Position numbers and translations under genes: made by a program. The notes below the pieces were generated by a model, which did not search any database, was not told the origin of the DNA, and saw nothing but the letters and a program-made list of their open reading frames with translations. Below, in pieces: positions 1 through 33,318 of a DNA stretch of 39,582 nucleotides. The stretch lies in contig NW_021835769.1 of assembly GCF_006345805.1 (NCBI RefSeq), positions 1 to 39,582 of the forward strand, read 5' to 3'. Each line of letters starts with the position of its first letter. Within the stretch, counting starts at the first letter, position 1. The DNA comes from Octopus sinensis. Its lineage: Eukaryota.

Positions 1-560
1 TGTATATATATCAGTATATGTATATATACACGGATATGTATATATACACGTATATGTATATATACAAGTTATATGTATATATATAAGTATATGTATATAT
101 ACCCGTATATGTATATATACACGTATATGTATATATATATAATATATTATATACACGTATATGTATATATATAAGTATATGTATATATACACGTATATGT
201 ATATATACACGTATATGTATATATATAAGTATATGTATATATACACGTATATGTATATATATAAGTATATGTATATATACACGTATATGTATATATATAA
301 GTATATGTATATATACACGTATATGTATATATATAAGTATATGTATATATACACGTATATGTATATATATAAGTATATGTATATATACACGTATATGTAT
401 ATATATATAAGTATATGTATATATCCACGTATATGTATATATATAAGTATATGTATATATGCATATGTATATATATGTATAAATATATAATGTATACATA
501 TATATATGTATTAATATATATGTATATATATATATAGATGTATAAATATATGTATATATA
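1..560. repeat. AT-rich micro/minisatellite with a 36-bp dimeric core (GTATATGTATATATATAA + GTATATGTATATATACAC)
   Basis: Read directly. Alternating 18-mers run over ~160-430, and the ORF track shows a 12-aa periodic [12 protein letters not shown] translation. Confidence 0.95.
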
Positions 561-692
561 TATATAATTACAAATTGAGATAGGGGTTGTGAGTGCAACC
601 CATCATGGGATAACATACATCCGATATACTGCCAGTAAAGCACCCAACAAAGTAAATACATAAATGTTAAGAATTGCGATGCAATTAATTCA

Positions 693-698: not shown

Positions 699-1191
699 GC
701 ATTATATGTGCGAAGGTAAAACGTTTTACTACCAATTCATAATCCAAAATAAGAAAATGGAGAAATACACCTTAATCAGTAATCAACTACCAGATAATAC
801 CCATTCACATAATTTATTAAGCAACTTCATATGGACATCAAGGTCAAACATAATAGTACAGAAGAAAACAGTGCACATCAATGAGTAATATGATACAATA
901 GGTACAATAATGAGAGGACGTTAAATAATGTTAAATGACATGACGTTACTTAACGTTAAATGACTTGACGTTAAACGACAAGACGTTAAATAACGTCAAA
1001 GGACGTTGAATGACGATAAATGACATGACATTAAATGATGTTAAATGACATGATGTCAAATGACGTAAAATGATATGTTAAATGACATGATGTTAAAAAA
1101 TATGACGTTAAAAGACATGACGTTAAAAAGCATGACGATAAATAACTTTAAATGACGTTAAATGACATGACACTAAATAACGTTAAACGAT

Positions 1192-4100
1192 ATGACGTTA
1201 AATGACATGATGCTAAATAACGTTAAACAATATGACGTTAAATGACATGACCATAAATGAGGTTAAATGACATGACGTTAAATGACAAGACGTTAAATGC
1301 CTTAAATGACGTTGAATGATTTGACGTCAAATGACGGTAAATGACGGTAAATGACTTGAAATGACGGTAAATGACATGAAGTTAAATGACATGACGTTAA
1401 AAGACATGACGTTAAATGAAGTTAAGTGACATGTCGTGAAATGACGTTAAATGACATGACTTCAATTGACGTTAAATTACATAACGTTAAATAACGTGAA
1501 AAAACATGACGTTAAATGACAGTAAATGACATGACGTTAAATGATGTTAAATGACATGACGTTAAATGACATGACGTTCAATGAAGTTAACTGACGTAAA
1601 ATGACGTTAAATGACATGAAGTTAAATGACATGACTTTAAATGACGTTAAATGATGGTATATGGCATGACGTTAAATGATGTTAAATGAAATGACGTTAA
1701 ATGACATGACTTTAAATGACGTTAAATGATGGTATATGGCATGACGTTAAATGACGTAATATGTCATAACGTTAAATGACATTACGTAAAATGACGTTAA
1801 ATGAAATGATGTTAAATGACGTTAAAAGGCATGACGTTAGATGACGACGTTAAATGACATTACATGAAATCACATTAAATGATGTTAAAGGACATGACGT
1901 TAAAAGGCATGACATTAAATAACATGACGTTAAATGACATGAAGTTAAATGACGTTAAATTACATGACGTAGAATGACATGACGTAAAATGACGTTACAT
2001 CAACGTCAAATGACATGACATTACTTGACGTTAAATAACGTCAAAAAACGTTAAATGACATGATGTCAAATGACGTTAAATTACATAACGTTAAATGACG
2101 TGATGTTAAATAACGTGAAAAAACATGACGTTAAATGACAGTAAATGACATGACGTTAAATGATGTTAAATGACATGACGTTAAATGACGTGACGTTAAA
2201 TGAAGTTAAATGATATGACGTTAACTGACGTAAAATGACGCTAAATGACATGAAGTTAAATGACGTTTAATGACATGACGTTAAATGATGTTAAATGAAA
2301 TGACGTTAAATAACGTAAAATGTCATAACGTTAAATGATATTACGTAAAATGACGTTAAATGAAATGATGTTAAATGACGTTAAAAGGCATGACGTTAAA
2401 TGACATTACATGAAATCACATTAAATGACGTTAAAGGACATGACGTTAAATAACATGAAGTTAAATGACGTTAAATTACATGACGTAAAATGACGTTACA
2501 TCAACGTTAAATGACATGACATTACTTAACGTTACATAACTTGACGTTATATAACGTCTAAAACGTTAAATGACATGACGTTAAATGACGTAAAATAACA
2601 TGACGTTAAATGACGATGTCAAATGACGCCAAATGACATCACGTTAAATCACGTGAAAAGGCATGACGTTAAATGACATGACCTTAAATGAGGTTAACTA
2701 ACATGACGTTCAATGACACGAAGTTAAATGACATTGAATGACGTTAAATGACATGATGCTAAATAACGTTAAACAATATGACGTTAAATGACATGACCAT
2801 AAATGAGGTTAAATGACATGACGTTAAATGACAAGACGTTAAATGCTTTAAATGACGTTGAATGATTTGACGTCAAATGACGGTAAATGACGGTAAATGA
2901 CTTGAAATGACGGTAAATGACATGAAGTTAAATGACATGACGTTAAAAGACATGACGTTAAATGAAGTTAAGTGACATGTCGTGAAATGACGTTAAATGA
3001 CATGACTTCAATTGACGTTAAATTACATAACGTTAAATAACGTGAAAAAACATGACGTTAAATGACAGTAAATGACATGACGTTAAATGATGTTAAATGA
3101 CATGACGTTAAATGACATGACGTTCAATGAAGTTAACTGACGTAAAATGACGTTAAATGACATGAAGTTAAATGACATGACTTTAAATGACGTTAAATGA
3201 TGGTATATGGCATGACGTTAAATGATGTTAAATGAAATGACGTTAAATGACATGACTTTAAATGACGTTAAATGATGGTATATGGCATGACGTTAAATGA
3301 CGTAATATGTCATAACGTTAAATGACATTACGTAAAATGACGTAAATGAAATGATGTTAAATGACGTTAAAAGGCATGACGTTAGATGACGACGTTAATG
3401 ACATTACATGAAATCACATTAATGATGTTAAAGACATGACGTTAAAAGGCATGACATTAAATAACATGACGTTAAATGACATGAAGTTAAATGACGTTAA
3501 ATTACATGACGTAGAATGACATGACGTAAAATGACGTTACATCAACGTTAAATGACATGATGTCAAATGACGTAAAATGACATGACTTTAATGACGTTAA
3601 ATGACGTTAAATAACGTTAAATGACATGATGTCAAATGACGTTAAATTACATAACGTTAAATGACGTGATGTTAAATAACGTGAAAAAACATGACGTTAA
3701 ATGACAGTAAATGACATGACGTTAAATGATGTTAAATGACATGACGTTAAATGACGTGACGTTAAATGAAGTTAAATGATATGACGTTAACTGACGTAAA
3801 ATGACGCTAAATGACATGAAGTTAAATGACGTTTAATGACATGACGTTAAATGATGTTAAATGAAATGACGTTAAATAACGTAAAATGTCATAACGTTAA
3901 ATGATATTACGTAAAATGACGTTAAATGAAATGATGTTAAATGACGTTAAAAGGCATGACGTTAAATGACATTACATGAAATCACATTAAATGACGTTAA
4001 AGGACATGACGTTAAATAACATGAAGTTAAATGACGTTAAATTACATGACGTAAAATGACGTTACATCAACGTTAAATGACATGACATTACTTAACGTTA

Positions 4101-4322
4101 CATAACTTGACGTTATATAACGTCTAAAACGTTAAATGACATGACGTTAAATGACGTAAAATAACATGACGTTAAATGACGATGTCAAATGACGCCAAAT
4201 GACATCACGTTAAATCACGTGAAAAGGCATGACGTTAAATGACATGACCTTAAATGAGGTTAACTAACATGACGTTCAATGACACGAAGTTAAATGACAT
4301 TGAATGACGTTAAATGACATGA
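1192..4322. repeat. Higher-order tandem duplication, 2 x ~1.55 kb
   Basis: Rare markers recur at offsets of 1546-1566: TGCTAAATAACG at 1211/2757, TGATGTCAAA at 2061/3627, ACATGACGTTCAATGACACG at 2701/4267. Confidence 0.9.
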
Positions 4323-8800: not shown

Positions 8801-10900
8801 AAATGACATTAAATGACATGACGTTAAATGACGTTAAAGGACATGACGTTAAATGACATGAGGTTAAATGACGTTAAATGAACTGACGTTAAATGATATG
8901 ACGTTAAATGACATGACGTGAAATGACGTTAAATGACATTAAATTTACATAACGTTAAATGACGTTAAAAAGCATGACGTTAAATGATATGACACTAAAA
9001 AATATTGAATGATATGAAGTTAAATGACGTAAAATGACATGACGTAAACGAGGTTAAATTAAATGACGTTAAATGACGTGATGTGAAATGATGTTAAATA
9101 ACGATGTTTAAATGACTTGCCGTTAAATGACTTGCCGTTGAATGACGTGACGTTATAAGACATGAAGTTAAATGATATTAAATGACATAACGTTACATGT
9201 CGTTAAATAACGATAAATGACATGACGGTAAATGACGTTAATTGACATAAAGTTAAATGATGTTAAATGACGTTAAATAACATGACGTTAAACGACGTTG
9301 AATGACGTAAAATGACATGACGTTAAATGACGTTAAATGATGTTAAATGACGTTAAATGACATGATGTTAAATAACATGACGTTATATGACATGATGATA
9401 AATGACAAGATGTTAAATGACATGACGTTAAATAATATGAAATGACATGACGTAAAATAACGTTAAATGAAATGACGTTAAACGACGTCAAATGATATAG
9501 ATAACATGAAGTTGAATGATGTTAAACGACGTCAAACGACGTAAATGATATAGATAACATGACGTTAAATGACGTTAAATAACGTTAAAAGACATTACGT
9601 TAAATGACGGTAAATGACATTACGTTCAATGACGTTAAATGACATGACGTTGAATGACGTTAATTGACGTTAAAAAACATTACGTTAAATACCGTTAAAG
9701 GACATGACGTTAAATGACACGACGTTAAATGACATGACGTTAAATGACGCTACATGATGATAAATGACATGACGTTATTTGACGTTAAATGACATGACGT
9801 AAAATGACGTGAGATGACGTTAAATGATGTTAAATGATATGACGTTAAATGACGTTAAATGACGTCAAATGATCAAACGTTAAATGGCATGACGTTAAAT
9901 GACGTCAAATGACATGTCGTTAAATGACGTTAAATAACATGATGTTAAATGACGTTAAATGACATGTCATTAAATGACGTAAAATCACGTAAAATGACAT
10001 GATGTTAAATGACGTCAAATGACATGTCGTTAAATGACGTTAAATAACATGACGTTAAATGACGTTAAATGACATGACGTTGAATGACATTAAATGACAT
10101 GACATTAAATGACGTTAAATGAAGTTAAAAGACATGACGTCAAACAACGTTAAATGAAATGACGTTAAATTATATGCCGTCAAATGACGTTAAATGACAT
10201 TAAGTGTCATGAAGTTAAATGACGTTAAATGACGTTACATGACATGACTTAAAATATCATTAAATGAATTTAAATGACATGACGTTAACTGACGTTAAAA
10301 GACGTTAAATAACATGACGTTAAATAACATGACGTTAAATGACGTTATATGACGTTTAATGATATGACGTTAAGTGATGTTAAATGAAATGACGTTTAAT
10401 GACGTTCAGTGATGTTGAATGAAATGACGTTAAATGACATGATATTAAATGACGTTAAATGACATGTCGTGAAATGACGTTAAATGACATGATTTTAAAT
10501 GTCGTTAAATGACATGACTTTAAATCATGTTAAATGACTTTAAATGACGGTACATGACATGACGTTTAATGACGTTAAATGACATGACGTTACATGCCGT
10601 AAAATGTCATAACGTTTAATGACCTGACGTTAATTAAGATGACGTTAAATGAAATGACGTTAAATGACGTTAAATAACGACGTTAAATGACGTTAAATGA
10701 CATGAAGTTAAATGACGTTAAATGACATGAAGTTAAATGATTTAATGATATGATTTTAAACGGCGTTAAATGACATGAAGTTAAATGACATTAATGACAC
10801 GACGTGAAATGACGTTAAATTACGTTTAAATGATGTTAAATGACATGACGTTAAATGGCATTAAATGACATCACGTTGAATGACGCTAAATGACGTTAAA
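5860..10900. repeat. Older, diverged higher-order duplication, ~2.9 kb period
   Basis: Markers AAATTTACATAACG ~6055/8941, GACTTGCC 6174/9114, GATCAAACG 6969/9871, TATATGCCG ~7234/10161. Confidence 0.8.
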
Positions 10901-13900
10901 TGACATGACCTTAAATGACGTAAATGACATTACGTTAAATCACTATAAATGATGTAATTAACATGACGCTTAAATAACGTTAAATGATATTACGTTAAAT
11001 GACGTTAATGAACTGACCTTAAATGACGTTAAATGACATGACCTTAAATGAGGTTAAATGACATGACGTTAAATGACGTTAAATTACATGACGTTAAATG
11101 ACGTTAAATGACATAAAGTTAAATGACGTTGAATGACGTTGAATGATGTTAAATGACATGACGTTAAATGACATGACTTTAAATGACGTTAAATGACGTT
11201 AAATGACATGATGTTAATTGAAATGACGTTAAATGACGTTGCATGACGTTAAATGACATGACGCTACTCGACGTTAAATGACATGACGTCAAATGACGTT
11301 AAATGACAATACATATCGTGACGTTAAATATCGTGAAATGACGTTAAATAACGTCAAAAGACGTTAAATGACATGACTTTAAATGAGAAGACGTTAAATG
11401 ACGTTAAATGAAGTTGAATGACATGAACTTAATGAGGCTAAATGACATGACGTTAAATGACATTATATGACATGACGTTAAATGAGTTAAATGACGTTAA
11501 ATGACGTTAAATTACATGACGTAAAATAATATTTAACTTACGTTAAACGACATGACTTGAAATGACGTTCAATGACATGAAGTTAAATGACGTCAAATAC
11601 ATGACGTAAATGACGTTAAGTGAATTTAAATGACATGATGTTAAATGAAATGACGTTAAATGACGTTCAGTGATGTTGAATGAAATGACGTTAAATGACA
11701 TGATATTAAATGACGTTAAATGACATGTCGTGAAATGACGTTAAATGACATGATTTTAAATGTCGTTAAATGACATGACTTTAAATCATGTTAAATGACT
11801 TTAAATGACGGTACATGACATGACGTTTAATGACGTTAAATGACATGACGTTACATGCCGTAAAATGTCATAACGTTTAATGACCTGACGTTAATTAAGA
11901 TGACGTTAAATGAAATGACGTTAAATGACGTTAAATAACGACGTTAAATGACGTTAAATGACATGAAGTTAAATGACGTTAAATGACATGAAGTTAAATG
12001 ATGTTAAATGATATGATTTTAAACGGCGTTAAATGACATGAAGTTAAATGACATTAAATGACACGACGTGAAATGACGTTAAATTACGTTTAAATGATGT
12101 TAAATGACATGACGTTAAATGGCATTAAATGACATCACGTTGAATGACGCTAAATGACGTTAAATGACATGACCTTAAATGACGTTAAATGACATTACGT
12201 TAAATCACTATAAATGATGTAAATTAACATGACGCTAAATAACGTTAAATGATATTACGTTAAATGACGTTAAATGACATGACCTTAAATGACGTTAAAT
12301 GACATGACCTTAAATGAGGTTAAATGACATGACGTTAAATGACGTTAAATTACATGACGTTAAATGACGTTAAATGACATAAAGTTAAATGACGTTGAAT
12401 GACGTTGAATGATGTTAAATGACATGACGTTAAATGACATGACTTTAAATGACGTTAAATGACGTTAAATGACATGATGTTAATTGAAATGACGTTAAAT
12501 GACGTTGCATGACGTTAAATGACATGACGCTACTCGACGTTAAATGACATGACGTCAAATGACGTTAAATGACAATACATATCGTGACGTTAAATATCGT
12601 GAAATGACGTTAAATAACGTCAAAAGACGTTAAATGACATGACTTTAAATGAGAAGACGTTAAATGACGTTAAATGAAGTTGAATGACATGAACTTAAAT
12701 GAGGCTAAATGACATGACGTTAAATGACATTATATGACATGACGTTAAATGATGTTAAATGACGTTAAATGACGTTAAATTACATGACGTAAAATAATAT
12801 TTAACTTACGTTAAACGACATGACTTGAAATGACGTTCAATGACATGAAGTTAAATGACGTCAAATTACATGACGTTAAATGACGTTAAGTGAATTTAAA
12901 TGACATGATGTTAAATGAAATGACGTTAAATGACGTTCAGTGATGTTGAATGAAATGACGTTAAATGACATGATATTAAATGACGTTAAATGACATGTCG
13001 TGAAATGACGTTAAATGACGTTAAATGACATGACTTTAAATCATGTTAAATTATTTAAATGACGGTACATGACATGACGTTAAATGAAGTTAAATGACAT
13101 GGCGTTACATGCCGTAAAATGTCATAACGTTTAATGACCTGACGCTAAATGACGTTAAATGACATGACGTTAAATGACGTTAAATGATATGATGTTCAAT
13201 GACGTTAAATGACATGAAGGTAAATGACGTTAAATGACATGACGGTAAATAACGTTAAATGACATGACGCTAAAAGATGTTAAATTACGTTAAATGACAT
13301 GACGTTAAATAACGTAAAATGAAATTAAATGACGTTAAATGACGTTATAAAACATGACGTTAAATGACATGAAGTTAAATGACAAGAGGTTAAATGAAGT
13401 TAAATGACGTTCAAGGATATGACATTAAATTACATTAAATGACATCACGTTAAATGACGTAAAATGACGTTAAAAGGCATGATGTTAAATTACATGACGT
13501 TAAATGACGTTAAATGACATGACGTTAAATGATGTCAAATGAAATGATATTAAATGATGTTAAATGACATGTCGTGAAATGACGTTTCATGACGTTAAAT
13601 GTCATGATGTTAAATGACATGACGTTAAATGACGTTAATTAAGATGACGTTAAATGAAATGACGTTAAATGACGTTAAATAACATGACGTTAAATGACGT
13701 TAAATGACATGAAGTTAAATGACGTTAAATGACATGAAGTTAAATGACGTTAAATGATATGATTTTAAACGGCGTTAAATGACATTAAATGACACGACGT
13801 GAAATGACGTTAAATTACGTTTAAATGATGTTAAATGACATAACGTTAAATAGCATTAAATGACATCACGTTGAATGACGTTAAATGACGTTAAATCACG

Positions 13901-14620
13901 TTAAAAGGCATGAAGTTAAATGACGTTAAGTGACATTACGTTAAATCACTATAAATGATGTTAATTAACATGAGGCAAAATAACGTTAAATGATATTACG
14001 TTAAATGACGTTAAATGACATGACCTTAAATGAGGTTAAATGACATGACGTTAAATGACGTTAAATGATATGACGTTAAATGACGTTAAATGACATAAAG
14101 TTAAATGACGTTGAATGACGTTGAATGATGTTAAATGACATGACGTTAAATGACATGAATTTAAATGACGTTAAATGACGTTAAATGACATGATGTTAAT
14201 TGAAATGACGTTAAATGACGTTGCATGACGTTAAATGACATGACGCTACTCGACGTTAAATGACATGACGTCAAATGACGTTAAATGACAATACATATCG
14301 TGACGTTAAATGACGTGAAATGACGTTAAATAACGTCAAAACACGTTAAATGTCATGACTTTAAATGAGAAGACGTTAAATGACGTTAAATGAAGTTGAA
14401 TGACATGAACTTAAATGAGGCTAAATGACATGACGTTAAATGACATTATATGACATGACGTTAAATGATATTAAATGACGTTAAATGACGTTATATTACA
14501 TGACGTTAAATAACGTTAACTTACGTTAAACGACATGACTTGAAATGACGTCCAATGACATGAAGTTAAATGACGTTAAATTACATGACGTTAAATGACG
14601 TTAAGTGAATTTAAATGACA
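10370..14620. repeat. Higher-order repeat, ~1.27 kb unit, two copies plus a longer third copy
   Basis: CTACTCGAC at 11264, 12530 and 14246; GACGTTCAGTGATG at 10401, 11662 and 12932. Confidence 0.88.
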
Positions 14621-15311
14621 TGATGTTAAATGACGTGAAATAACATGACGTTCAACGACGTGAAATGACATGACGTTAAATGAAGTTAAATGACATGACG
14701 TAAAATGACGTTAAATGACTTGATGTTAAATGACGTTATATAACGTTAAATGACGTTTAATGACATGACGTTAAATGACAATAAATGTCGTTAAATGACG
14801 TTAAATGACATGACGTTAAATGACGTTAAATGATGTTAAATGACGTGACATTAAATGACCTTAAAGGACATTACTTTAAATGACGGTAAATGACGGTGCG
14901 TGACATAACCTTAAATGACGTTAAATGACATGACGTTAAATGACGTAAAATGTTATAACGTTAAACGAGGTTTACGTTAAATGACGTTAAATTACATGAC
15001 TTTAAATGACGTTAAATGACACGATGTTTAATGACGTTCAAAGGCCTGACGTAAAATGAAGTTAAATGACGCTAAATAACATGACGTTAAATGACATTAA
15101 ATGACATCATGTTAAATAACGTTAAATGACGTTATATGACTTTAATTGACATGACGTTGAATAACGTTAAATGACATGACTTCAAATGATGTTAAATGAC
15201 GTTAAGTAACGGTACATGACATAACGTTAAATGACATGACATTAAATTACGTAAAATGTCATAACATTAAATGACATTACGTTAAATGGCGTTAAGTGAC
15301 ATGACGTGAAA

Positions 15312-16995: not shown

Positions 16996-17049
16996 TAAAT
17001 GACATGATGTTAAATGACATTAAATGACACGACGCTAAATGACGTTAAA

Positions 17050-18510
17050 TGACGTTTAAATGATATTAAATAACATGACGATAATTGACGTTAAATGAAA
17101 TGATATTAAAAGGCATTAAATGATATCACGTTAAATGACGTTAAAAGGCATGACGTTAAATGACATGACGTTAAATGACGTTAAATGACATGACGTTAAA
17201 TTACTTTAAATGATGTTAAATGACGTGACGCAAAATAACGTTAAATGATATGACGTTAAATGAGAGTAAATGACCTGACCTTAAATGAGGTTAAATGACA
17301 TGACGTTAAATGACGTTAAGTGACGTTAAATAATGACGTTTTCCGACATTACGTTAAATGACGTTAAATGACGTTAAATGGCATGCCGTTAAATGACGTT
17401 AAATGACATGATGTTAAATGACGTTGAATGACGTTAAATGACGTTCAATGACGTTAAATTACGTTAAATTACGTTAAAGGACATGATGATAAATGACTTT
17501 AAAAAGCATGACGTTTAATGATATGACGTAAAATGACGTTACATGACTTCACGTTAAATGACATGACGTTAAATGATGTTAAATGACGTTAAATAACATG
17601 ACGTTAAGTGACGTTAATTGACATGACGTTAAACCACGTTAAATGACATGAAGTTAAATGACGTAAATGACATGATGTTAAACGATGTTGAATGAAATGA
17701 CGTTAAATTACGATAAATGACGTTATATGATATGACGTTAAATGACATTAAATGACAAGACGCTAAATGACGTAAAATGACGTTATATGATATTAAAAAA
17801 CATGACCTTAAATGACGTTAAATGACATGATATTAAATGGCATTAATGATATCACGTTAAATGACGTTAAAAGGCATGACGTTAAATGACATGACGTTAA
17901 ATGACGTTAAATGACATGACGTTAAATTACTTTAAATGATGTTAAATGACGTGACGCAAAATAACGTTAAATGATATGACGTTAAATGAGAGTAAATGAC
18001 CTGACCTTAAATGAGGTTAAATGACATGACGTTAAATGACGTTAAGTGACGTTAAATAATGACGTTTTCCGACATTACGTTAAATGACGTTAAATGACAT
18101 TAAATGACATGACGTTAAATGACGTTAAATGACATGATGTTAAATGACGTTGAATGACGTTAAATGACGTTCAATGACGTTAAATTACGTTAAATTACGT
18201 TAAAGGACATGATGATAAATGACTTTAAAAAGCATGACGTTTAATGATATGACGTAAAATGACGTTACATGACTTCACGTTAAATGACATGACGTTAAAT
18301 GATGTTAAATGACGTTAAATAACATGACGTTAAGTGACGTTAATTGACATGACGTTAAACCACGTTAAATGACATGAAGTTAAATGACGTTAAATGACAT
18401 GATGTTAAACGATGTTGAATGAAATGACGTTAAATTACGATAAATGACGTTATATGATATGACGTTAAATGACATTAAATGACAAGACGCTAAATGACGT
18501 TAAATGACGT
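17050..18510. repeat. Tandem duplication, 2 x 726 bp, with a diverged third copy following
   Basis: TGAGAGTAAATGACCTGACC at 17261/17987; TTCCGACATT at 17341/18067. Confidence 0.9.
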
Positions 18511-21500
18511 TTATATGATATTAAAAAACATGACCTTAAATGACGTTAAATGACATGATATTAAATGGCATTAAATGATATCACGTTAAATGACGTTAAA
18601 TGACGTTAAAAGGCATGACGTTAAATGACATGACGTTAAATTACGTTAAATGACATGACGTAAAATTACTTTAAATGATGTTAAATGACGTGACGCAATA
18701 TAACGTTAAATAATATGACGTTAAATGACGGTAAATGACATGACCTTAAATGATGTTAAATGACATGACGTTAAATGACGTTAAGTGACGTTAAATAATA
18801 TGATGTTTACTGACATTACGTTAAATGAGGTTAAATGACATGACGTTAAATGACGTTGAATGAATTTAAATGACGTTAAATGGCATGCCGTTAAATGACG
18901 TTAACTGACATGAAGTTAAATGACGTTAAATGACGTTAAAGGACATGACGATAAATGACGTTAACTTACGTTAAAAGGCATGACGTTAAATGATATGACG
19001 TTAAATGATATGACGTTAAATGACGTTAAATGACATGACGTTAAATGACGTTAAATGACATGACGTTAAATGATGTTAAATGACGTTAAATAGCATGACG
19101 TTAAGTGACGTTTATTGACATGAGGTTAAACCACGTTAAATTACATGAAGTTAAATGACATGATGTTAAAAGACGTTGAATGAAATGACGTTAAATTACG
19201 TTAAATAACGTTATATGACATGACGTTAAATGACATTAAATGACACGACGCCAAATGACGTTAAATGACGTTTAAATGATATTAAATAACATGACGTTAA
19301 ATGACATGATACTAAATGGCATTAAATTATATCACGTTAAATGACGTTAAAAGGCATGACGTTAAATGACATGACTTTAAATGACGTTAAATGACATGAC
19401 CTGAAATTACTTAAAATGATATTAAATGACGTGACGCAAAACAACGTTAAATGATATGACGTTCAATGACGTTAAATGACATGACCTTAAATGATATTAA
19501 ATGACATTACTTTAAATGACGTTAAATAACGTTAAATGACGGTACAAGTTAAATGACGTGAAATGACATGATGTTAAATGCCGTTAAATGACGTGAAATG
19601 ACGTTAAATGTCATGAGGTTATATGACGTTAAATTATGTTAAATTACATTAAATGACAACGTTAAATAACGTTATATGACGTTAAAAGACGTTAAATATC
19701 GTTAAAAAGCATGATGTTAAATGACGTTAAATGACATGACGTTAATTGAAGTTAAATGACATGACATTAAATTACTTTAAATGACATGGCGCTAAATGAC
19801 GTTAAATGATATGACGTTAAATGACATGACGTTAAATGACATGAACTTAAATGACGTTAAATAACATGACGTTAAGTGAACTGACGTTAAATGACGATAA
19901 ATGACATGACGTTAAGTGACGGTACGTGAAGTTAAATAACATGACGTTAAATGACGTTTAATGACGTGAAATGGCATGACGTTTCTTGACCTTAAATGAC
20001 ATGACGTTAAATGACGTCAAATGACGTTACATATCATGACGTTATATGACGTGAAATGACGTTAAAAATAATGACCTTAAATGATGTTAAATGACAAGTC
20101 GTTAACTGCTTTAAATGACATTAAATAACATGACCTTAAATGACGTTAAATGACATGACGTTAAATGACGTTAAATGACATGACGTTGAATGACGTTTAA
20201 TGACATGACACTAAATTACGTTAAATGACGTTAAATAACGTGACGTTAAATGACGTTAAATTACATGTTATTTGGCGTTAAGTGACGTTAAATGACGTGA
20301 AATGAAATGACGTTAAATGACATTAAATGATATGACGTTAAATGACATGACGTTAAATCACGTTAAATGACATGATGTTAAATAACGTTATATGAAGTTA
20401 AATGACGTTATTGACATGACGTCAAATTACATGACGTTAATTGACGATAAATGATAACGAATGACATGATGTCAAATGACGTTAAATGACATGACGTGAA
20501 ATGACGTTAAATGACTTAAAATGACTTGACGTTAAATGGCGTTAAATGATGTTACATGACATGACCTTAAATGACGTTAAATGACATGACTTTAAATGAA
20601 GTTAAATGATGGTAAATAACATGAAGTTAAATAATATTAAACGACGGGAAATCACATGACGTTAAATGACTTTATATAACGTTAAATTACATGACGTTAA
20701 ATGACGTTAAACGACGTTAAATGAATTGACGTGAAATGATGTTAAATGACGGTAAATGACATGATGTTAAATGAAGTAAAAAGACATGACGTTAAAAGAC
20801 GTTAAATTACACGACGTAAAAAGATTTTATATGACGTTAAATGATGTGAAATTATATGACGTTAAATGACATGACGTTAAAAGACGTTAAATGACCTGAC
20901 GTTAAATGACGCTAAATGACGTTAAATGATATGATGTTAAATTACGTTAAATGACATGACGTTTAATGAAGTTAAATGACGTTAAATGACATGACGTTAA
21001 ATGACATTAAATGATATCACGTTTAATGACGTTAAATGACGTTAAAGGACATGGCGTTAAATGATGTTAAATGACATGACGTTAAATGCCGTTAAATGAT
21101 GTTAAAAAACATGAAGTTAAATACTATTAAACGACGTTAAATTACATGACGTTAAATGACGTTATATAACGTTAAATTACATGACGTTAAATGACGTTAA
21201 ATGACATGACGTTAAATGACGTTAAATGATGTTAAAAAACATGAAGTTAAATGCTATTAAACGACGTTAAATCACATGACGTTAAATGACGTTATATAAC
21301 GTTAAAGGACATGACGTTAAATGACGTTACATGACATGATATGAAATGATGTTAAATGTCGGTAAATGACATGATGTTAAATGAAGTAAAAAGACATGAC
21401 ATTAAAAGACGTCAAATGACATAACGTTAAATGATTTTATATGACGTTAAATGACGTGACGTAAAATGATGTTAAATTAAATGATGTTAAATGACGTTAA

Positions 21501-22039
21501 ATGACATGGTGTTAAATGACGTTAAATGACATGACGTGAAATGACGTTAAATGACGTTAAATGACATGACGTTAAATGATGTTAAATTAAATGACGTTAA
21601 ATGACGTTAAATGACATGGTGTTAAATGACGTTAAATGATATGACGCTAAATGACATTAAATGAAGTTAAATGACGTTAAATGACATGACGTTCTCTGAC
21701 ATGATGGTAAATGACGTTAAATTACACGTGGGAGAAGGACGTTAACTGACATTAAATGACCTTAAATGAACTTAAATGATGTTAAATGACATGACGTTAA
21801 ACGACGTTAAATGATATTGAATGATATGACGTTAAATGACGTTAAATGACGATAAATGACATGACGTTAAATGACATATCTAAATGCCGTTAAATGACAT
21901 GCCGTTAAATTACGTTATGTGACAAGAAATGATGTGACGTTAAATGATGTTAAATGACATGACGTTAAATGATATTGAATTACGTCAAATGACGTTAAAT
22001 GACATGAATTTAAATGACGTTAAATGACGTTAAATGACA

Positions 22040-24990
22040 TGACGTGAAATGACGATAAATGACATGACGTTAATTGATGTTAAATGACGTTAAATGACAT
22101 GACGTTAAATAACGTTAAATGGCGTTAAATAACATGACGCTAAATGACGGTAAATGACGCTAAATAACATTAAATGATATGATGTTAAACGAAGTTAAAT
22201 GACATGAAGTTAAAAGACTTTATATGGCGTTAAATGTCTTCAAATAACATGATGTTAAATGATGTTAATGAAACGACGTTAAATGACGTGAAATGACATG
22301 ACGTTAAATAACGTTAAAAGACAAGATGTTAAATGACGTTAAATGACGTTATGAACATGAAATGAACAGACGTTAAATGACGTTAGATGATATGACGTTA
22401 AATGACGTTAAGTGATGATAAATGACATGATGTTAAATAACGTTAAATGACATGACGTTAAATAACGTTAAATGGCGTTAAATAACATGACGCTAATGAC
22501 GGTAAATGACGTTAATAACATTAAATGATATGATGTTAAACGAAGTTAAATGACATAAAGTTAAATGAATTTATATGGCGTTAAATATCTTCAAATCACA
22601 TGACATTAAATGATGTTAATGAAACGACGTTAAATGACGTGAAATGACATGACGTTAAATGACGTAAAATGACGTTAAATGACGTTATGAACATGACATG
22701 AAATGACTTAAATGACGTTAGATGATATGAAGTTAAATGACGTTAAGTGATGATAAATGACATGATGTTAAATGACGTTGAATGATATGACGTGCAATTA
22801 CGTTAAATGACATGACGTTAAATAACTTAAAATGGCGTAAATAACATGACGCTAAATGACGGTAAATGACGCTAAATAACATTAAATGATATGATGTTAA
22901 ACGAAGTTAAATGACATGAAGTTAAAAGACTTTATATGGCGTTAAATGTCTTCAAATAACATGATGTTAAATGATGTTAATGAAACGACGTTAAATGACG
23001 TGAAATGACATGACGTTAAATAACGTTAAAAGACAAGATGTTAAATGACGTTAAATGACGTTATGAACATGAAATGAACAGACGTTAAATGACGTTAGAT
23101 GATATGACGTTAAATGACGTTAAGTGATGATAAATGACATGATGTTAAATGACGTTAAATGACATGACGTTAAATAACGTTAAATGGCGTTAAATAACAT
23201 GACGCTAAATGACGGTAAATGACGTTAAATAACATTAAATGATATGATGTTAACGAAGTTAAATGACATAAAGTTAAATGAATTTATATGGCGTTAAATA
23301 TCTTCAAATCACATGACATTAAATGATGTTAATGAAACGACGTTAAATGACGTGAAATGACATGACGTTAAATGACGTAAAATGACGTAAAATGACGTTA
23401 TGAACATGACATGAAATGACGTTAAATGACGTTAGTGATATGAAGTTAAATGACGTTAAGTGATGATAAATGACATGATGTTAAATGACGTTGAATGATA
23501 TGACGTGCAATTACGTTAAATGACATGACGTTAAATAACGTTAAATGGCGTTAAATAACATGACGCTAAATGACGGTAATGACGCTAAATAACATTAAAT
23601 GATATGATGTTAAACGAAGTTAAATGACATGAAGTTAAAAGACTTTATATGGCGTTAAATAAATGTCTTCAAATAACATGATGTTAAATGATGTTAATGA
23701 AACGACGTTAAATGACGTGAAATGACATGACGTTAAATAACGTTAAAAGACAAGATGTTAAATGACGTTAAATGACGTTATGAACATGAAATGAACAGAC
23801 GTTAAATGACGTTAGATGATATGACGTTAAATGACGTTAAGTGATGATAAATGACATGATGTTAAATGACGTTAAATGACATGACGTTAAATAACGTTAA
23901 ATGGCGTTAAATAACATGACGCTAAATGACGGTAAATGACGTTAAATAACATTAAATGATATGATGTTAAACGAAGTTAAATGACATAAAGTTAAATGAA
24001 TTTATATGGCGTTAAATATCTTCAAATCACATGACATTAAATGATGTTAATGAAACGACGTTAAATGACGTGAAATGACATGACGTTAAATGACGTAAAA
24101 TGACGTTAAATGACGTTATGAACATGACATGAAATGACGTTAAATGACGTTAGATGATATGAAGTTAAATGACGTTAAGTGATGATAAATGACATGATGT
24201 TAAATGACGTTGAATGATATGACGTGCAATTACGTTAAATGACATGACGTTAAATAACGTTAAATGGCGTTAAATAACATGACGCTAAATGACGGTAAAT
24301 GACGCTAAATAACATTAAATGATATGATGTTAAACGAAGTTAAATGACATGAAGTTAAAAGACTTTATATGGCGTTAAATGTCTTCAAATAACATGATGT
24401 TAAATGATGTTAATGAAACGACGTTAAATGACGTGAAATGACATGACGTTAAATAACGTTAAAAGACAAGATGTTAAATGACGTTAAATGACGTTATGAA
24501 CATGAATGAACAGACGTTAAATGACGTTAGATGATATGACGTTAAATGACGTTAAGTGATGATAATGACATGATGTTAAATGACGTTAAATGACATGACG
24601 TTAAATAACGTTAAATGGCGTTAAATAACATGACGCTAAATGACGGTAAATGACGTTAAATAACATTAAGTGATATGATGTTAAACGAAGTTAAATGACA
24701 TAAAGTTAAATGAATTTATATGGCGTTAAATATCTTCAAATCACATGACATTAAATGATGTTAATGGAACGACGTTAAATGACGTGAAATGACATGACGT
24801 TAAATGACGTTAAATGACATGACGTAAAATGACGTTAAATGACGTTATGAACATGACATGAAATGACGTTAAATGACGTTAGATGATATGACGTTAAATG
24901 ACGTTAAGTGATGATAAATGACATGATGTTAAATGACGTTGAATGATATGACGTGCAATTACGTTAAATGACATGACGTTAAATAACGTT
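22040..24990. repeat. Dimeric higher-order repeat (AB)x4, monomers ~355 bp, HOR ~720 bp
   Basis: TATATGGCG at 22221, 22572, 22933, 23285, 23646, 24003, 24366 and 24717, in alternating contexts. CGTGCAAT at 22791, 23504, 24223 and 24952. Confidence 0.93.
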
Positions 24991-27479
24991 AAATGACGTG
25001 AAATGATGTTAAATGAAATGACGTGAAGTGACATTAAATGACGTTAAATGACAGGACTTTAAATGACGTTAAATGACGTTAAATGATGTTAAATGACATG
25101 TCGTTAAATGACTTTAATTGACGTAAAATGACATAATACCGTTAAATGACGTTAAATGACATGATTTTAAATTACGTTATGTGACAAGAAATGACGTGAC
25201 GTTAATGATGTTAAATGACATGACGTTAATTGATATTGGATGACGTTAAATGACGTTAAATGACATGAATTTAAATGACGTTAAATGATATTAAATGACA
25301 TGACATTAAATTACATTAAATGACATGACGTTAAATGACGATAAATGCCATGACGTTAAATGACGTTAAATGACATGACGTTAAATGACGTTAAATGACG
25401 AGAAATGATGTTAAATGACATGACGTGAAATGATGTTAAATGACATGACGTGAAATGACATTAAATGAAGTTAAATGACAGGACTTTAAATGACGTTAAA
25501 TGATGTTAAATGACATGACGTTAAATGACTTTAATTGACGTAAAATGGCGTTAAATGCCGTTAAATGACATGCCGTTAAATTACGTTATGTGACAAGAAA
25601 TGATGTGACGTTAAATGATGTTAAATGACATGACGTTAAATGATATTGAATTACGTCAAATGACGTTAAATGACATGAATTTAAATGACGTTAAATGAGA
25701 TTAAATGACATGACATTAAATGACATTAAATGACAAGACGTTAAATGACGATAAATGTCATGACGTTAAATGACGTTAATTGACATGACGTTAAATTACG
25801 TTCTGTGACGTTAAAGGACATGACGTTAAATGATTTCAAAAGATGTTAAAGGACATGTCGTTAAATGACGTTAAATGACGTTAAACGACATGTCGTTAAA
25901 TGTCGTTAAATAATGTTGAATGACATGATGTTAAATGACGTTAAATGACGATAAATGACCTTAAATGTCGTTTCGTTAAATGACGTTAAATGACATGACG
26001 TTAAATAACTTTTAATGACGTTAAATGTCATGAACTTAAATGACGTTAAATGACATGACGTTAAATGTTTAATGATATGACGTTAAATGACGTTAAATGA
26101 TGTTAAATGACCTAACGTTAAATGACGTTAAATGCCGTTACATGACATGCCGTTAAATGACGTTAAATGACATGACGTTAAATTACGTTATGTGACGAGA
26201 AATGACGTGACCTTTAATGATGTTAAATGACATGACGTTAAATGATATTGAATGACGTTAAATGAGGTTAAATGACATGAATTTAAATGACGTTAAATGA
26301 CATTATTATGACATGACATTAAATGTCATTAAATGACATGACGTTAAATGACGATAAATGTCATGACGTTAAATGACGTCAAATGACATGACGTTAAATT
26401 ACGTTCTGTGACGTTAAATGACATGACGTTAAATGATTTTAAAAGATGTTAAATGACATGTCGTTAAATGACGTTAAATGCTGTTAAATGACATGATGTT
26501 AAATGACGTTAAATGACGATAAATGACCTTAAATGACATCTCGTAAAATGATGTTAAATGACATGTCGTTAAATAACGTTTAATGACGTTAAATGTCATG
26601 AACTTCAATGACGTTCAATGGCATGACGTTAAATGTCGTTTAATGATATGACGTTAAATGACGTTAAATGATGTTAAATTACCTGACGTTAAATGACGGT
26701 AAATGAAGTTAAATGATATGCCGTTAAATTACGTTAAATGACATGACGTTAAATTACGTTATGTGACAAGAAATGACGTGACGTTAAATGAGGTTAAATG
26801 ACATGACGTTAAATGATATTGAATTACGTTAAATGATGTTAAATGACATGACGTTAAATAACTTTAATTGACGTAAAATGACGTTAAATGCCGTTAAATG
26901 ACATGCCGTTAAATGACATGATGTTAAAGTACGTTATGTGACGAGAAATGACGTGACGTTAAATGATGTTAAATGACATGACGTTAAATGATATTGAATG
27001 ACGTCAAATGACGTTAAATGACATGAATTTAAATGACGTTAACTGACATTAAATGACATGACGTTAAATGACATTAAATGACATGACGTTAAATGACGAT
27101 AAATGTCATGACGTTAAATGACGTTAAATGACATGACGTTAAATTACGTTCTGTGACGTTAAATGACTTGACGTTAAATGATTTTAAAAGATGCTAAATG
27201 ACAAGTCGTTAAATGACGTTAAATGAAGTTAAATGACGATAAATGACCTTAAATGACATCTCGTTAAATGACGTTAAATGACATGACGTTAAATAACGTT
27301 TAATGACGTTAAATGTCATGAACTTAAATGACGTTAAATAACATGACGTTAAATGACATGACGTTAAATGTCGTTTAATGATATGACGTTAAATGATGTT
27401 AAATGACATGACGTTAAATGACGTTAAATGATGTTAAATGACATGACGTTAAATGACGTTAAATGGCGTTAAATGACGT

Positions 27480-28750: not shown

Positions 28751-31562
28751 GTTAAAAGACAAGATGTTAAATGACGTTAAATGACGTTATGAACATGAAA
28801 TGAACAGACGTTAAATGACGTTAGATGATATGACGTTAAATGACGTTAAGTGATGATAAATGACATGATGTTAAATGACGTTGAATGACATGACGTGAAA
28901 TTACGTTAAATGACATGACGTTAAATAACGTTAAATGACGTGAAATGATGTTAAATGACATGACGTGAAGTGACATTAAATGACGTGAAATGACATGACG
29001 TTAAATGACGTTAAAAGACAAGATGTTAAATGACGTTAAATGACATGACGTAAAATGACGTTAAATGACGTTATGAACATGACATGAAATGACGTTATGA
29101 ACATGACATGAAATGACGTTAAATGACGTTAGATGATATGACGTTAAATGACGTTAAGTGATGATAAATGACATGATGTTAAATGCCGTTGAATGACATG
29201 ACGTGAAATTACGTTAAATGACACGACGTTAAATAACGTTAAATGACGTGAAATGATGTTAAATGATATGACGTGAAATGACATTAAATGACGTTAAATG
29301 ACAGGACATTAAATGACGTTAAATGATGTTAAATGACATGACGTTAAATGACTAATTGACGTAAAATGACGTTAAATGATTTTAAAAGATGTTAAATGAC
29401 ATGTCGTTAAATGACGTTAAATGACATGTCGTAAAATGACGTTAAATGATGTTAAATGACATGATGTTAAATGACGTTAAATGACGATAAATGACCTTAA
29501 ATGACATCTCGTTAAATGACGTTAAATGACATGACGTTACATGACATGACGTTAAATAACGTTTAATGACGTTAAATGTCATGAAGTTAAATGACGTTAA
29601 ATGACATGACGTTAAATGTCGTTTAATGATATGACGTTAAATGACGTTAAATGATGTTAAATGACCTGACGTTAAATGACGTTAAATGATGTTAAATGAC
29701 ATGCCGTTAAATGACGTTAAATGATATGACGTTAAATTACGTTATGTGCCAAGAAATGACGTGACGTTAAATGATGTTAAATGACATGACGTTAAATGAT
29801 ATTGAATGACGTTAAATGACGTTAAATGACATGAATTTAAATGACGTTAAATGACATTATTATGACATGACATTAAATGTCATTAAATGACGATAAATGT
29901 CATGACGTTAAATGACGTTAAATGTCATGACGTTAAATTACGTTCTGTGACGTTAAATGTCATGACGTTAAATGATTTTAAAAGATGTTAAATGGCATGT
30001 CGTTAAATGACGTTAAATGACGTTAAATGACGTTAAATGATGTTAAATGACATGATGTTAAATGACATGATGTTAAATGACGTTAAATGACGATAAATGA
30101 CCTTAAATGACATCTCGTTAAATGACGTTAAATGACATGACGTTAAATAACGTTTAATGACGTTAAATGACTTCAATGACATGACGTTAAATGTCGTTTA
30201 ATGATATGACGTTAAATGACGTTAAATGATGTTAAATTATCTGACGTTAAATGACGTTAAATGCCGTTAAATGACATGCCGTTAAATGACGTTAAATGAC
30301 ATGACGTTTAATTACGTTATGTGACAAGAAATGACGTGACGTTAAATGATGTTAAATGACATGATGTTAAATGATATTGAATGACGTTAAATGACGTTTA
30401 ATGACATGTCGTTAAATGACGTTAAATGACGTTAAATGACATGTCGTAAAATGACGTTAAATGATTTTAAATGACGTTAAATGACGATAAATGACCTTAA
30501 ATGACATCTCGTTAAATGACGTTAAATGACATGACGTTAAATAACGTTTAATGACGTTAAATGTCATGAACTTAAATGACGTTAAATGACATGACGTTAA
30601 ATGTCGTTTAATGATATGACGTTAAATGACGTTAAATGATGTTAAATGACCTGACGTTAAATGACGTTAAATGATGTTAAATGACATGACGTTAAATGAC
30701 GTTAAATCACATGATGTTAAATAACGTTAAATGACATGACGTTAAATGAGGTTAAATGACATGACGTTAAATGATATGATGTTAAATGACGTTAAATGAC
30801 GTAAAATGACATAACGTTAAATGACTTTAAATGACATGACTTTAAATGACATTAAATGACATGACGTTAAATGACGTTAAATGACATGACGTGAAATGAT
30901 GTTAAATGACGTTAAATGACGTAAAATGGCATGATGTTAAATGACATGACGTTAAATCACATGACGCTAAATGACGTTAAATGAGATGACGTTGAATGAC
31001 GTTAAATTACATGACGTTACATGAAGTTAAATGACATGACGTTAAATGACATTCAATGTCATGACGTTAAATGGTGTTAAATGACGTTAAATGACATGAC
31101 GTTAAATGACGTTAAATGACATGACGTTAAACGACGTTAAATGACATGACGTTAAATGATGTTAAATGACATGACGTTAAATGCGTTAAATGACGTTAAA
31201 TGACATGACGTTAAATGACGTTAAATGACATGACGTTAAATGCGTTAAATGGCGTTAATTGACATGACGTTAAATGACTTTAAATGATATGACGTTAAAT
31301 GACATGACGTTGGACGAGGGGGTTGTATTTGTTGTAGGTGGCAGGTGCATACATTCTGTGTCATTGTTGCAGATGATCGATGAGGCTTGTCAGTACTCTC
31401 TCCCATGGATTGTTTACAGGCTAACTCATGGCACAATCAGGTGCAGGACAGGGTACGTTGGTCATACTGACTCGCTTTTTGTCATAAATAAGTCTGACAA
31501 CTGTTTGCTTTCACCAATATTTTACGCAGTTTGAAGCAATGACCAAAGGGTCTTCAGTACAC

Positions 31563-33245: not shown

Positions 33246-33318
33246 ATATTCTGTTGTGTCTGGGAAGAGTTATTCTCTTTTAGTGCCTTATTATTTAACA
33301 GACTCACCGGTAAAAATT
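33246..33318. repeat. Left arm of a ~72-bp inverted repeat (partner 34577-34648)
   Basis: ATATTCTGTTGTGTCTGGGA..AGT.ATTCTCTTTTAGT.CCTTATTATTTAACA.ACTCACC.GTAAAAATT is found in both orientations with ~5 differences. Confidence 0.9.

What the first reader, a model, noticed from the sequence alone, without database searches (positions are those of the whole stretch)
917..31311. 30-kb satellite written in a two-letter pentamer grammar
The array parses in a fixed 5-bp register as X=GTTAA and Y=ATGAC, nearly always as XY or XYY; X rarely follows X. The commonest variants are the X/Y hybrids ATTAA, GTGAC, GTGAA, ATGAA, ATTAC and GTTAC, which complete the set (A/G)T(G/T)A(A/C). This suggests one ancestral pentamer that split into two forms still exchanging by slippage or conversion. 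The architecture parallels pentamer-derived human HSat2/3. I do not recognise this family as described, but I could not search for it.
Basis: partly seen in the sequence, partly recalled or inferred. Interest (0 to 1): 0.75.

Follow-up and report, generated by a model that had tools for sequence, protein, structure and literature searches.

The report
Ordinary 30-kb short-unit tandem repeat array
The window holds a real, complete 30-kb non-coding tandem array built from a 10-base unit and a 15-base variant of it, but its variant spectrum fits ordinary biased point mutation, so it is an apparently undescribed yet ordinary satellite-type repeat, not two pentamers still exchanging.

Summary
The array is real. 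It spans window 909/920..31311 (30.4 kb), runs in one orientation and has unique DNA on both sides.

**Grammar.** Parsed as X=GTTAA and Y=ATGAC, it gives 6094 tokens, 97.6% of them 5 nt. Of 2438 units, 94.9% are XY or XYY. XX and longer Y runs are mostly degenerate tokens.

- The 5-bp register is not fixed; it shifts 143 times.
- The commonest variant is ATGAT (362) and the third is ATAAC (179). Neither is an X/Y hybrid.
- Hybrids are 24% of non-consensus tokens.

**Hybrid model fails.** With six mutation classes controlled, hybrid substitutions are not enriched:
- fold 1.11, p=0.56;
- class-matched observed/expected 1.06, bootstrap CI 1.00-1.11;
- 52 hybrid events against 58 expected among 213 differences between young paralogous blocks.

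G/C-to-A/T bias explains the abundant hybrids. X and Y share 2 of 5 positions, which chance gives with P=0.47.

**Best description.** A 10-bp monomer and a 15-bp variant alternate as 25/35-bp units. These are nested in 0.35-1.5-kb tandem duplications at 88-99.7% identity, on a 77-80% background.

**Novelty.** I found no coding, RNA or hairpin signal, no published description, and no true relative in the collections I could scan. It is a new member of a known kind, of low interest.

The parts
909..31311 (+). The whole tandem array. Monomers are a = GTTAAATGAC (10 bp, XY) and b = GTTAAATGACATGAC (15 bp, XYY). There are 1358 a units, 955 b units and 125 degenerate units. The array runs in one orientation, averages about 0.5 mismatches per pentamer from consensus, and any two regions are 77-80% identical.
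   Evidence: TRF; autocorrelation; tokenisation; blastn self-comparison with no minus-strand hits.
909..930 (+). Left junction: ...AATGAGAGGAC|GTTAAATAATGTTAAATGAC. The first clean X is at 920. Two degenerate Y-like pentamers (ATGAG, AGGAC) lie at 910-919.
   Evidence: Direct reading.
31300..31320 (+). Right junction: ...ATGACATGACGTT|GGACGAGGGGG. It is abrupt, cuts an X after GTT, and near-consensus units run right up to the edge.
   Evidence: Direct reading. In the last 500 bp 73% of tokens are exact, against 51% in the first 500 bp.
1192..4322 (+). Very young tandem duplication of a 1546-bp block. The two copies differ by 5 mismatches and a few indels.
   Evidence: blastn self-comparison, 97.9% identity including gaps; global alignment.
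10375..14833 (+). Tandem copies of a block of about 1261 bp, 88-92% identical to each other.
   Evidence: blastn self-hits at lags 1261, 1744 and 3005.
15262..17026 (+). Tandem duplication of an 839-bp block at 98.8% identity with no gaps over 926 bp.
16879..19809 (+). About four copies of a 719-bp higher-order block, 85-88% identical.
   Evidence: blastn self-hits at lags 719 and 1445.
21982..25004 (+). About four copies of a 723-bp higher-order block at 94-97% identity. Each block consists of two diverged sub-blocks of about 353 bp (84%). Marker variant units recur every 335-380 bp.
   Evidence: blastn self-hits at lags 353, 723, 1437 and 2155; recurring variant units.

Best explanation
This is a complete, interstitial, non-coding satellite-type tandem array in a eukaryotic (animal) genome.

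**Units.** The working units are not pentamers. They are a 10-bp monomer (GTTAAATGAC) and a 15-bp variant carrying a second ATGAC (GTTAAATGACATGAC). The two tend to alternate, which gives 25-bp (a+b) and 35-bp (a+a+b) periodicities.

**How it evolves (inferred).**
1. Point mutation biased from G/C to A/T, with no extra CpG effect. This generates essentially all the word variants, including the so-called hybrids.
2. One-base slippage in the A/T runs.
3. Gain, loss or replacement of whole 5-, 10-, 15-, 25- or 35-bp pieces by out-of-register exchange between existing units. This shuffles a and b but hardly ever makes new forms such as XYYY.
4. Unequal exchange at the kb scale. This has repeatedly duplicated 0.35-1.5-kb blocks in tandem and created local higher-order repeats of different ages.

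**Shown and inferred.** The structure, the statistics and the nested duplications are shown. The mechanisms are inferred from those footprints and from established models of satellite evolution (replication slippage, unequal crossing-over). No sequence-specific function is indicated. The array is most likely neutral heterochromatin-type DNA.
For: **Array and periodicity:**

**Grammar and unit counts:**
- Unit order is non-random: ab/ba = 776/784 against 532 expected, and bb = 143 against 374 expected.

**Nested tandem duplications:**
- The 1546-bp pair differs by 5 mismatches.
- The 839-bp pair is 98.8% identical with no gaps.
- The 723-bp blocks are 96.9% identical and contain a 353-bp sub-repeat.
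- The background identity is 77-80%.
- There are no inverted self-hits.

**Gap lengths between young paralogues:** 1 bp x37, 5 x14, 10 x11, 15 x9, 20 x1, 25 x3, 30 x1, 35 x2.

**Mutation spectrum, mean rate per token:**
- C>T 0.069 and C>A 0.039.
- T>A 0.018, T>C 0.016, T>G 0.013 and C>G 0.012.

**Per-position conservation:** it follows base type only, with A/T positions at 0.88-0.95 and G/C positions at 0.81-0.87.

**No CpG effect:**
- ATGAT makes up 9.6% of Y tokens followed by A and 10.5% of Y tokens followed by G.
- G>A is 5.5% at the CpG G and 5.1% at the non-CpG G.

**No hybrid excess:**

**The a/b difference does not come from recent Y duplications:** Y1 and Y2 variants within XYY are uncorrelated, with 14 identical non-consensus pairs against 16.5 expected.

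**No functional signal:**
- There is no ORF above 56 aa.
- Rfam and tRNA scans find nothing.
- Single-strand folding z-scores lie between -1.1 and +0.7.

**The variation is real and not read noise:** kb paralogues reach 98.8-99.7% identity, and 97.6% of tokens are indel-free.
Against: - Only one locus is seen. Genome-wide abundance, chromosomal position, chromatin state and transcription are unknown, so 'satellite' in the strict sense and 'neutral' are both assumptions.
- Counts of variant words are inflated by block amplification (dispersion 9.6). The independent-event test rests on only 213 differences, polarised by consensus and not by an outgroup.
- A small hybrid excess of up to about 11% is not excluded.
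- The near-absence of XYYY despite ongoing 5-bp length changes is explained only by inference (exchange among existing units). It could instead reflect a constraint on spacing.
- The + strand C mutates about twice as often as G, and I have no explanation for this.
Confidence: 0.84

Rival explanations
1. One ancestral pentamer split into X and Y, and the two still exchange bases by 5-bp slippage or gene conversion, producing the hybrid words.
For: - The array has 5-bp periodicity.
- All eight words of (A/G)T(G/T)A(A/C) are present, and three hybrids are among the five commonest variants.
- 5-bp indels do occur between young paralogues (14 of 95 gaps).
Against: - There is no hybrid excess once mutation class is controlled: 1.11-fold with p=0.56, 1.06 with CI 1.00-1.11, and 52 against 58.3 independent events.
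- The top variant ATGAT and the third, ATAAC, are not hybrids.
- A/T-to-G/C hybrids are not enriched over non-hybrid alternatives at the same sites.
- Whole-token switches are nearly absent, with XYYY seen 3 times.
- X and Y share 2 of 5 positions, which chance gives with P=0.47.
Confidence: 0.05
2. A functional array. The TGACGT (bZIP/CRE-like half-site) core, or the phased TTAAAT tracts, spaced every 10 or 15 bp, make a protein-binding or centromere/heterochromatin-nucleating platform. Selection on spacing then keeps only XY and XYY.
For: - The syntax is strict: Y runs of 1 or 2 only, and 94.9% of units are canonical.
- CpG observed/expected is 2.8, and there is no CpG-specific decay.
- XYYY is nearly absent although 5-bp length changes occur.
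Against: - Per-position conservation tracks base type only. The CG of the core is the least conserved part: C 0.81 and G 0.85.
- Monomers average about 10% from consensus, and regions are only 77-80% identical to each other.
- No related arrays turned up elsewhere.
- The reading of the motif as a binding site comes from my memory only and was not tested.
Confidence: 0.08
3. An assembly or sequencing artefact, that is, a collapsed, expanded or noisy long-read consensus of a simpler repeat.
For: Long low-complexity arrays are error-prone in assemblies, and I had no reads to check.
Against: - Variation is 97.6% substitutional at the token level.
- The kb-scale paralogues are 98.8-99.7% identical, which random read noise of about 10% could not give.
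- There is a structured, nested higher-order pattern.
- Both junctions to unique DNA lie inside the window.
- The exact array length could still be wrong.
Confidence: 0.03

Closest known systems
Human satellite I (SATI): 42-bp repeat made of alternating A (17 bp) and B (25 bp) units, ABABA, with kb-scale HORs (PMC8125562)
   Same: - Both are AT-rich short-unit arrays built from two unit types of different length that mostly alternate.
- In both, B-B (here bb) is a minority form.
- In both, kb-scale higher-order repeats are superimposed.
   Different: - There is no sequence similarity.
- The units here are 10 and 15 bp, and the longer one is simply the shorter one plus a duplicated pentamer.
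- Only one 30-kb locus is known here; abundance and pericentromeric location are unknown.
Human satellites II/III: arrays derived from the pentamer ATTCC (PMC8125562)
   Same: Both show 5-bp periodicity, degenerate copies and organisation into higher-order blocks.
   Different: - HSat2/3 derive from one pentamer. Here two pentamers agree at only 2 of 5 positions and never replace each other.
- Neither X nor Y, nor their complements, is a rotation of ATTCC (direct comparison).
- The unit of turnover here is 10/15 bp and larger.
Simple-sequence satellites of Drosophila, such as the 10-bp AATAACATAG and the 5-bp AAGAG/AATAT families (from my own knowledge, not checked here)
   Same: Both have very short AT-rich monomers of 5-10 bp, one orientation and long arrays.
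   Different: Those arrays are typically far more homogeneous and Mb-sized. The array here is about 10% from consensus, mixes two unit lengths and is 30 kb long.
15-bp array (GTTAAATGATATGWC)n in metagenome contig Ga0123357_10006685 (L017 6-480)
   Same: - Its unit is the XYY word with Y1 = ATGAT. That is 14 of 15 identical to the b unit, and it is the variant carried by 91 b units in the window.
   Different: - It is a pure 15-bp array with no 10-bp units.
- Only 475 bp is seen, at a contig end.
- The remaining 13.6 kb shares nothing with the window flanks.
- The contig looks eukaryotic but comes from another organism.
- It is most likely a chance or convergent resemblance, picked out by my search pattern.

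Membership tests
Satellite DNA / long tandem array with higher-order repeats | Head-to-tail tandem copies of a monomer, in a single orientation, over tens of kb | tested here: met
   TRF finds an array over 909..31311 with thousands of copies. There are no minus-strand self-hits.
Satellite DNA / long tandem array with higher-order repeats | Higher-order repeat blocks that are more alike than neighbouring monomers | tested here: met
   Blocks of 353, 719-723, 839, 1261 and 1546 bp are 84-99.7% identical, against 77-80% background.
Satellite DNA / long tandem array with higher-order repeats | High genomic abundance at several loci, with heterochromatic or (peri)centromeric location | not testable with these tools
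   Only this window is available. No eukaryotic genome or read set could be searched.
Pentamer-derived satellites of the HSat2/3 type | Derivation from a single pentamer, with all units being diverged copies of one 5-mer | tested here: not met
   X and Y match at 2 of 5 positions, which chance gives with P=0.47. There is no interconversion.
Pentamer-derived satellites of the HSat2/3 type | Sequence relationship to (ATTCC)n | tested here: not met
   Direct comparison: GTTAA, ATGAC and their complements are not rotations of ATTCC/GGAAT. The motif is taken from PMC8125562.
Pentamer-derived satellites of the HSat2/3 type | 5-bp periodicity | tested here: met
   Autocorrelation peaks occur only at multiples of 5.
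Two-unit alternating satellites (human SATI style) | Two unit types of different length arranged mostly in alternation | tested here: met
   ab/ba are over-represented and bb is depleted (143 against 374 expected). This is a likeness in architecture only; no homology is claimed.
Microsatellite tail of a non-LTR retrotransposon, expanded | The array is continuous with the 3' end of a LINE in the matching orientation | tested here: inconclusive
   An RT-like fragment lies on the minus strand at 31749-31910, 440 bp from the array. It is short, has no Pfam hit, and no reading frame continues towards the array.
Protein-coding or structured-RNA repeat | A long open frame, or a match to an RNA family or a stable fold | tested here: not met
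   The longest ORF is 56 aa. Rfam gives no match at gathering score. Fold z-scores lie between -1.1 and +0.7.

The most novel reading that the evidence does not exclude
The 10/15-bp syntax (Y runs of exactly one or two, XYYY essentially forbidden) is held by selection and not by history. On this reading the array belongs to a lineage-specific, probably cephalopod, chromosomal satellite family. Its TGACGT-containing units at fixed 10/15-bp spacing would recruit a sequence-specific protein or mark centromeric or heterochromatic chromatin. The near-identical 15-mer array in an unrelated eukaryotic contig (L017) would then reflect convergence on the same binding word.
Probability: 0.06. Interest if true: 0.5.

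Novelty: new member of a known kind. Interest (0 to 1): 0.2.

Why it matters
The matter is modest. If the family proves abundant in its genome, the consensus gives a ready FISH or k-mer marker for a chromosomal domain in a group whose satellites I could not find described.

The array is also a tidy worked example of nested satellite evolution, from 5/10/15-bp units through 25/35 bp and about 350 bp up to 0.7-1.5 kb.

The main value of this check is negative. The attractive 'two letters still exchanging' reading is not needed, because a G/C-to-A/T-biased point-mutation spectrum reproduces the variant words.

Tried and rejected
1. **CpG-deamination hypothesis (mine).** I expected ATGAT and ATTAA to be CpG decay products. 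This was rejected. ATGAT is as frequent where the C is followed by A (9.6%) as where it is followed by G (10.5%). G>A is equal at the CpG G and the non-CpG G.

2. **'Frozen grammar' (mine).** I supposed a and b no longer interconvert. This is not supported as stated, because 5-bp gaps are as common as 10- and 15-bp gaps between young paralogues. I now read them as replacement of a by b through exchange. That reading is an inference from the rarity of XYYY and from uncorrelated Y1/Y2 variants.

3. **LINE-tail origin.** Inconclusive.

4. **Organism identification.**
   - Two protein searches, with the GIY-YIG ORF and with a SINE-spanning ORF, returned nothing.
   - Rfam and ARAGORN found nothing in the SINE-like repeats.
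   - SINE strings are in no paper and in no viral contig.
   - The octopus attribution therefore rests on my memory of these repeats only.

5. **Relatives of the array.**
   - The exact 25-mer has 0 hits in metagenome and prokaryote-genome collections.
   - The looser pattern GTTAAATGACN{0,5}GTTAAATGAC gave 74, 2 and 51 loci.
   - In the counts over all 127 loci and the sequence stretches I read, the multi-match loci are unrelated minisatellites of other periods and the rest hold too few copies to be arrays. The exceptions are L017 (a 15-bp array) and L071 (six 10-mers).

6. **Literature.**
   - No paper prints the consensus.
   - No cephalopod or octopus satellite paper turned up.
   - A centromere-atlas preprint mentions no molluscs.

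7. **Single-strand DNA folding.** It is not different from shuffles.


Full report
**1. What is there**

Window 909/920..31311 is one uninterrupted tandem array of 30.4 kb.
- TRF reports it with periods 10, 15, 25 and 35. Scores are highest for 35 and 25.
- GC content is a flat 0.29-0.31, with constant positive GC and AT skew.
- Self-identity peaks only at lags that are multiples of 5: 0.67 at 25, 0.64 at 10, 0.62 at 35 and 0.60 at 15, against 0.17-0.29 elsewhere.
- Both junctions to non-repetitive DNA lie inside the window, so the array is complete.
- There are no inverted self-matches, so the orientation is single.

**2. The grammar**

I parsed the array by dynamic programming into tokens that best match X=GTTAA or Y=ATGAC.
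- There are 6094 tokens, 5950 of them (97.6%) exactly 5 nt. X numbers 2563 and Y 3531.
- Exact copies are 58% of X and 54% of Y.
- Transitions are XY 2438, YX 2439, YY 1092 and XX 124.
- Y runs are 1 (1416), 2 (987), 3 (3) and 4 (33).
- As units, XY occurs 1358 times and XYY 955 times, together 94.9% of 2438.
- The exceptions (XXY, XXXYY, XYYYY) are mostly doubly mutated tokens such as GTGAT or GATAA that the parser cannot assign. Several recur every 335-380 bp as markers of a higher-order repeat.

The XY/XYY description is therefore correct, and even conservative.

The register, however, is not fixed. There are 143 shifts and the median in-register stretch is 17 tokens. A naive fixed-phase reading spreads the consensus words over all five phases.

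**3. Units above the pentamer**

Write a=XY (10 bp) and b=XYY (15 bp).
- Unit order is non-random. ab and ba occur 776 and 784 times against 532 expected. bb occurs 143 times against 374, and aa 488 times against 756.
- Runs of a between b units fall off geometrically: 519, 252, 73, 18. This explains the 25-bp (ab) and 35-bp (aab) periods.

blastn of the array against itself shows tandem duplications of different ages nested on top:

| Region | Lag (bp) | Identity |
|---|---|---|
| 1192-2756 / 2738-4322 | 1546 | 5 mismatches |
| 10375-12483 / 11636-13743 | 1261 | 92% |
| 15262-16187 / 16101-17026 | 839 | 98.8%, no gaps |
| 16879-19083 / 17598-19809 | 719 | 88% |
| 21987-24275 / 22710-25004 | 723 | 96.9%, with a 353-bp sub-period at 84% |

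- Any two other regions are 77-80% identical.
- Gaps between young paralogues are quantised: 1 bp x37 (all but two are a single A or T), then 5 x14, 10 x11, 15 x9, 20 x1, 25 x3, 30 x1 and 35 x2.
- The right end is the most homogeneous. In the last 500 bp 73% of tokens are exact, against 51% in the first 500 bp.
- The a:b ratio drifts from 1:1 on the left to about 2:1 on the right.
- Paralogues at 98.8-99.7% identity, together with an indel-poor token profile, show that the roughly 10% divergence from consensus is biological and not read noise.

**4. Test of the hybrid idea**

The variant words rank as follows: ATGAT 362, ATGAA 184, ATAAC 179, ATTAA 141, ATTAC 121, ATGTC 78, GTAAA 75, TTTAA 75, GTGAA 70, GTGAC 64, and so on down to GTTAC 31. 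The first and third are not hybrids.

Grouped by strand-collapsed mutation class, mean rates per token are:
- C>T 0.069 and C>A 0.039;
- T>A 0.018, T>C 0.016, T>G 0.013 and C>G 0.012.

The three abundant hybrids are precisely G/C-to-A/T changes. The three A/T-to-G/C hybrids are no commoner than non-hybrid alternatives at the same site.

Three tests agree that there is no hybrid excess:
- A quasi-Poisson model with the six classes gives a hybrid effect of 1.11-fold (t=0.59, p=0.56). Without classes the apparent effect is 1.61-fold and is still not significant, because dispersion is huge.
- The class-matched observed/expected ratio is 611/579 = 1.06, with a 1-kb block bootstrap CI of 1.00-1.11.
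- To avoid counting amplified copies, I polarised 213 differences between young paralogous blocks. Of these, 52 are hybrid-direction against 58.3 expected.

Three further observations bear on the model:
- Whole-token switching, which a 5-bp out-of-register exchange should produce most readily, is almost absent (XYYY x3).
- X and Y agree at 2 of 5 positions, with chance P=0.47 at this composition. Common ancestry of the two pentamers is neither supported nor excluded.
- Conservation per position follows base type only: A/T positions 0.88-0.95 and G/C positions 0.81-0.87.

**5. Hypotheses of mine that failed**

- CpG decay. ATGAT is equally frequent where the C is followed by A (9.6%) and by G (10.5%). 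G>A is the same at CpG and non-CpG G. By inference, the array has not been subject to methylation-driven decay.
- A strictly frozen a/b pattern. 5-bp gaps between young paralogues are common. But XYYY is nearly absent, and Y1/Y2 variants within XYY are uncorrelated (14 identical non-consensus pairs against 16.5 expected). I therefore infer that these are replacements of a by b, or the reverse, through exchange between existing units, not fresh pentamer slippage.

**6. Function**

- There is no ORF above 56 aa in the array.
- There is no Rfam or tRNA match.
- Single-strand DNA folding is indistinguishable from shuffles.
- Nothing suggests a sequence-specific role.

My committed explanation is a neutral satellite-type array evolving by biased point mutation, small slippage, unit-level exchange and kb-scale unequal crossing-over. 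The structures are shown. The mechanisms are inferred from their footprints and from standard satellite theory.

**7. Context and origin**

The right flank is typical repeat-rich animal DNA.
- There is a GIY-YIG nuclease ORF (Pfam PF01541, E=6e-6) and an RT-like fragment.
- At least two dispersed SINE-like families and many AT, CA and TG microsatellites are present.
No tool could confirm it.

**8. Relatives and prior description**

- The exact 25-mer is absent from the metagenome and prokaryote collections.
- A looser pattern retrieved 127 loci. In the counts over all of them and the stretches I read, they are unrelated minisatellites or hold too few copies to be arrays.
- One exception is L071, which has six 10-mers.
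- The other is L017, with 31.8 copies of GTTAAATGATATGWC at the end of a eukaryote-like contig that shares nothing else with the window. Given the selection by my own pattern, I treat L017 as convergence or chance.
- No paper in the library prints the consensus or describes a cephalopod satellite.
- Repbase and Dfam could not be searched.

**9. Comparison with known kinds**

- The array works like a classical short-unit satellite.
- Its two-unit alternation is closest in style to human satellite I, which has A 17 bp and B 25 bp units in ABABA order with kb HORs (PMC8125562).
- It shares only 5-bp periodicity with HSat2/3. It fails the defining features of that family, namely a single ancestral pentamer and an ATTCC relationship.
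- It is not homologous to any of them.

**10. Verdict**

The mechanistic interpretation is not supported.
- The feature is an apparently undescribed member of a well-known kind.
- Interest is 0.2.

Noticed in passing
window 1-566: An AT-rich 18/36-bp minisatellite (TGTATATATATAAGTATA alternating with TGTATATATACACGTATA). It has 15.8 copies of the 36-mer at 87% match, runs off the left edge of the window, and lies 340 bp from the big array.
   Followed up: partly
window 34058-34399 (-), with inverted repeats at 33246-33318 and 34577-34649: A 113-aa ORF with a GIY-YIG nuclease domain (Pfam PF01541, E=6e-6). It is bracketed by a 73-nt inverted repeat that is 93% complementary. It is probably a transposon remnant. 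It has no homologue in the protein collection.
   Followed up: partly
window 31749-31910 (-): A short reverse-transcriptase-like fragment (...QFGFVSGRSTSHDIF...) lies 440 bp from the right edge of the array. It has no Pfam hit and no continuation towards the array.
   Followed up: partly
window about 35480-35640, 37265-37430, 38485-38660, 38727-38890, 38900-39060 and 39402-39522 (-); second family at 32945-33100, 34667-34845 (-), 36621-36776, 37052-37152 (-) and 38353-38445: Two dispersed SINE-like repeat families, 65-93% alike, often preceded by (TA)n. I recall them as octopus SINEs, but Rfam, ARAGORN, the literature and the collection scans gave no confirmation.
   Followed up: partly
window 36057-36233 and 39089-39267: A further element of about 180 bp is present twice in direct orientation, 3 kb apart, at 81-89% identity.
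   Followed up: no
window 35850-36610 and 37480-37900: Degenerate CA-rich and TG-rich low-complexity arrays face each other in inverted orientation (arms 70-85% complementary).
   Followed up: no
L017 (Ga0123357_10006685) 6-480: A 15-bp tandem array (GTTAAATGATATGWC)n with 31.8 copies at 90% match, cut by the contig end. It is the same XYY word as a common b-unit variant of the window. The contig looks eukaryotic and shares no other sequence with the window.
   Followed up: partly
window 909-31311 (+ strand): Strand asymmetry of substitutions. The single C of Y is changed about twice as often as the G positions (C>T 10.3% against G>A 5.1-5.5%; C>A 5.2% against G>T 2.9-3.4%). This could be a mutational strand bias or the amplification of a few variants.
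   Followed up: no
window 909-31311: Polarity along the array. The a:b ratio moves from about 1:1 on the left to about 2:1 on the right. The right-most 500 bp is the least diverged (73% exact tokens against 51% at the left end), which suggests younger units at the right edge.
   Followed up: partly
window 913-921 and 31306-31318: Both junctions carry GGACG next to the array: left GAGAGGACG|TTAAAT, right GACGTT|GGACGAGG. This may be a trace of the seed sequence from which the array grew, or coincidence.
   Followed up: no
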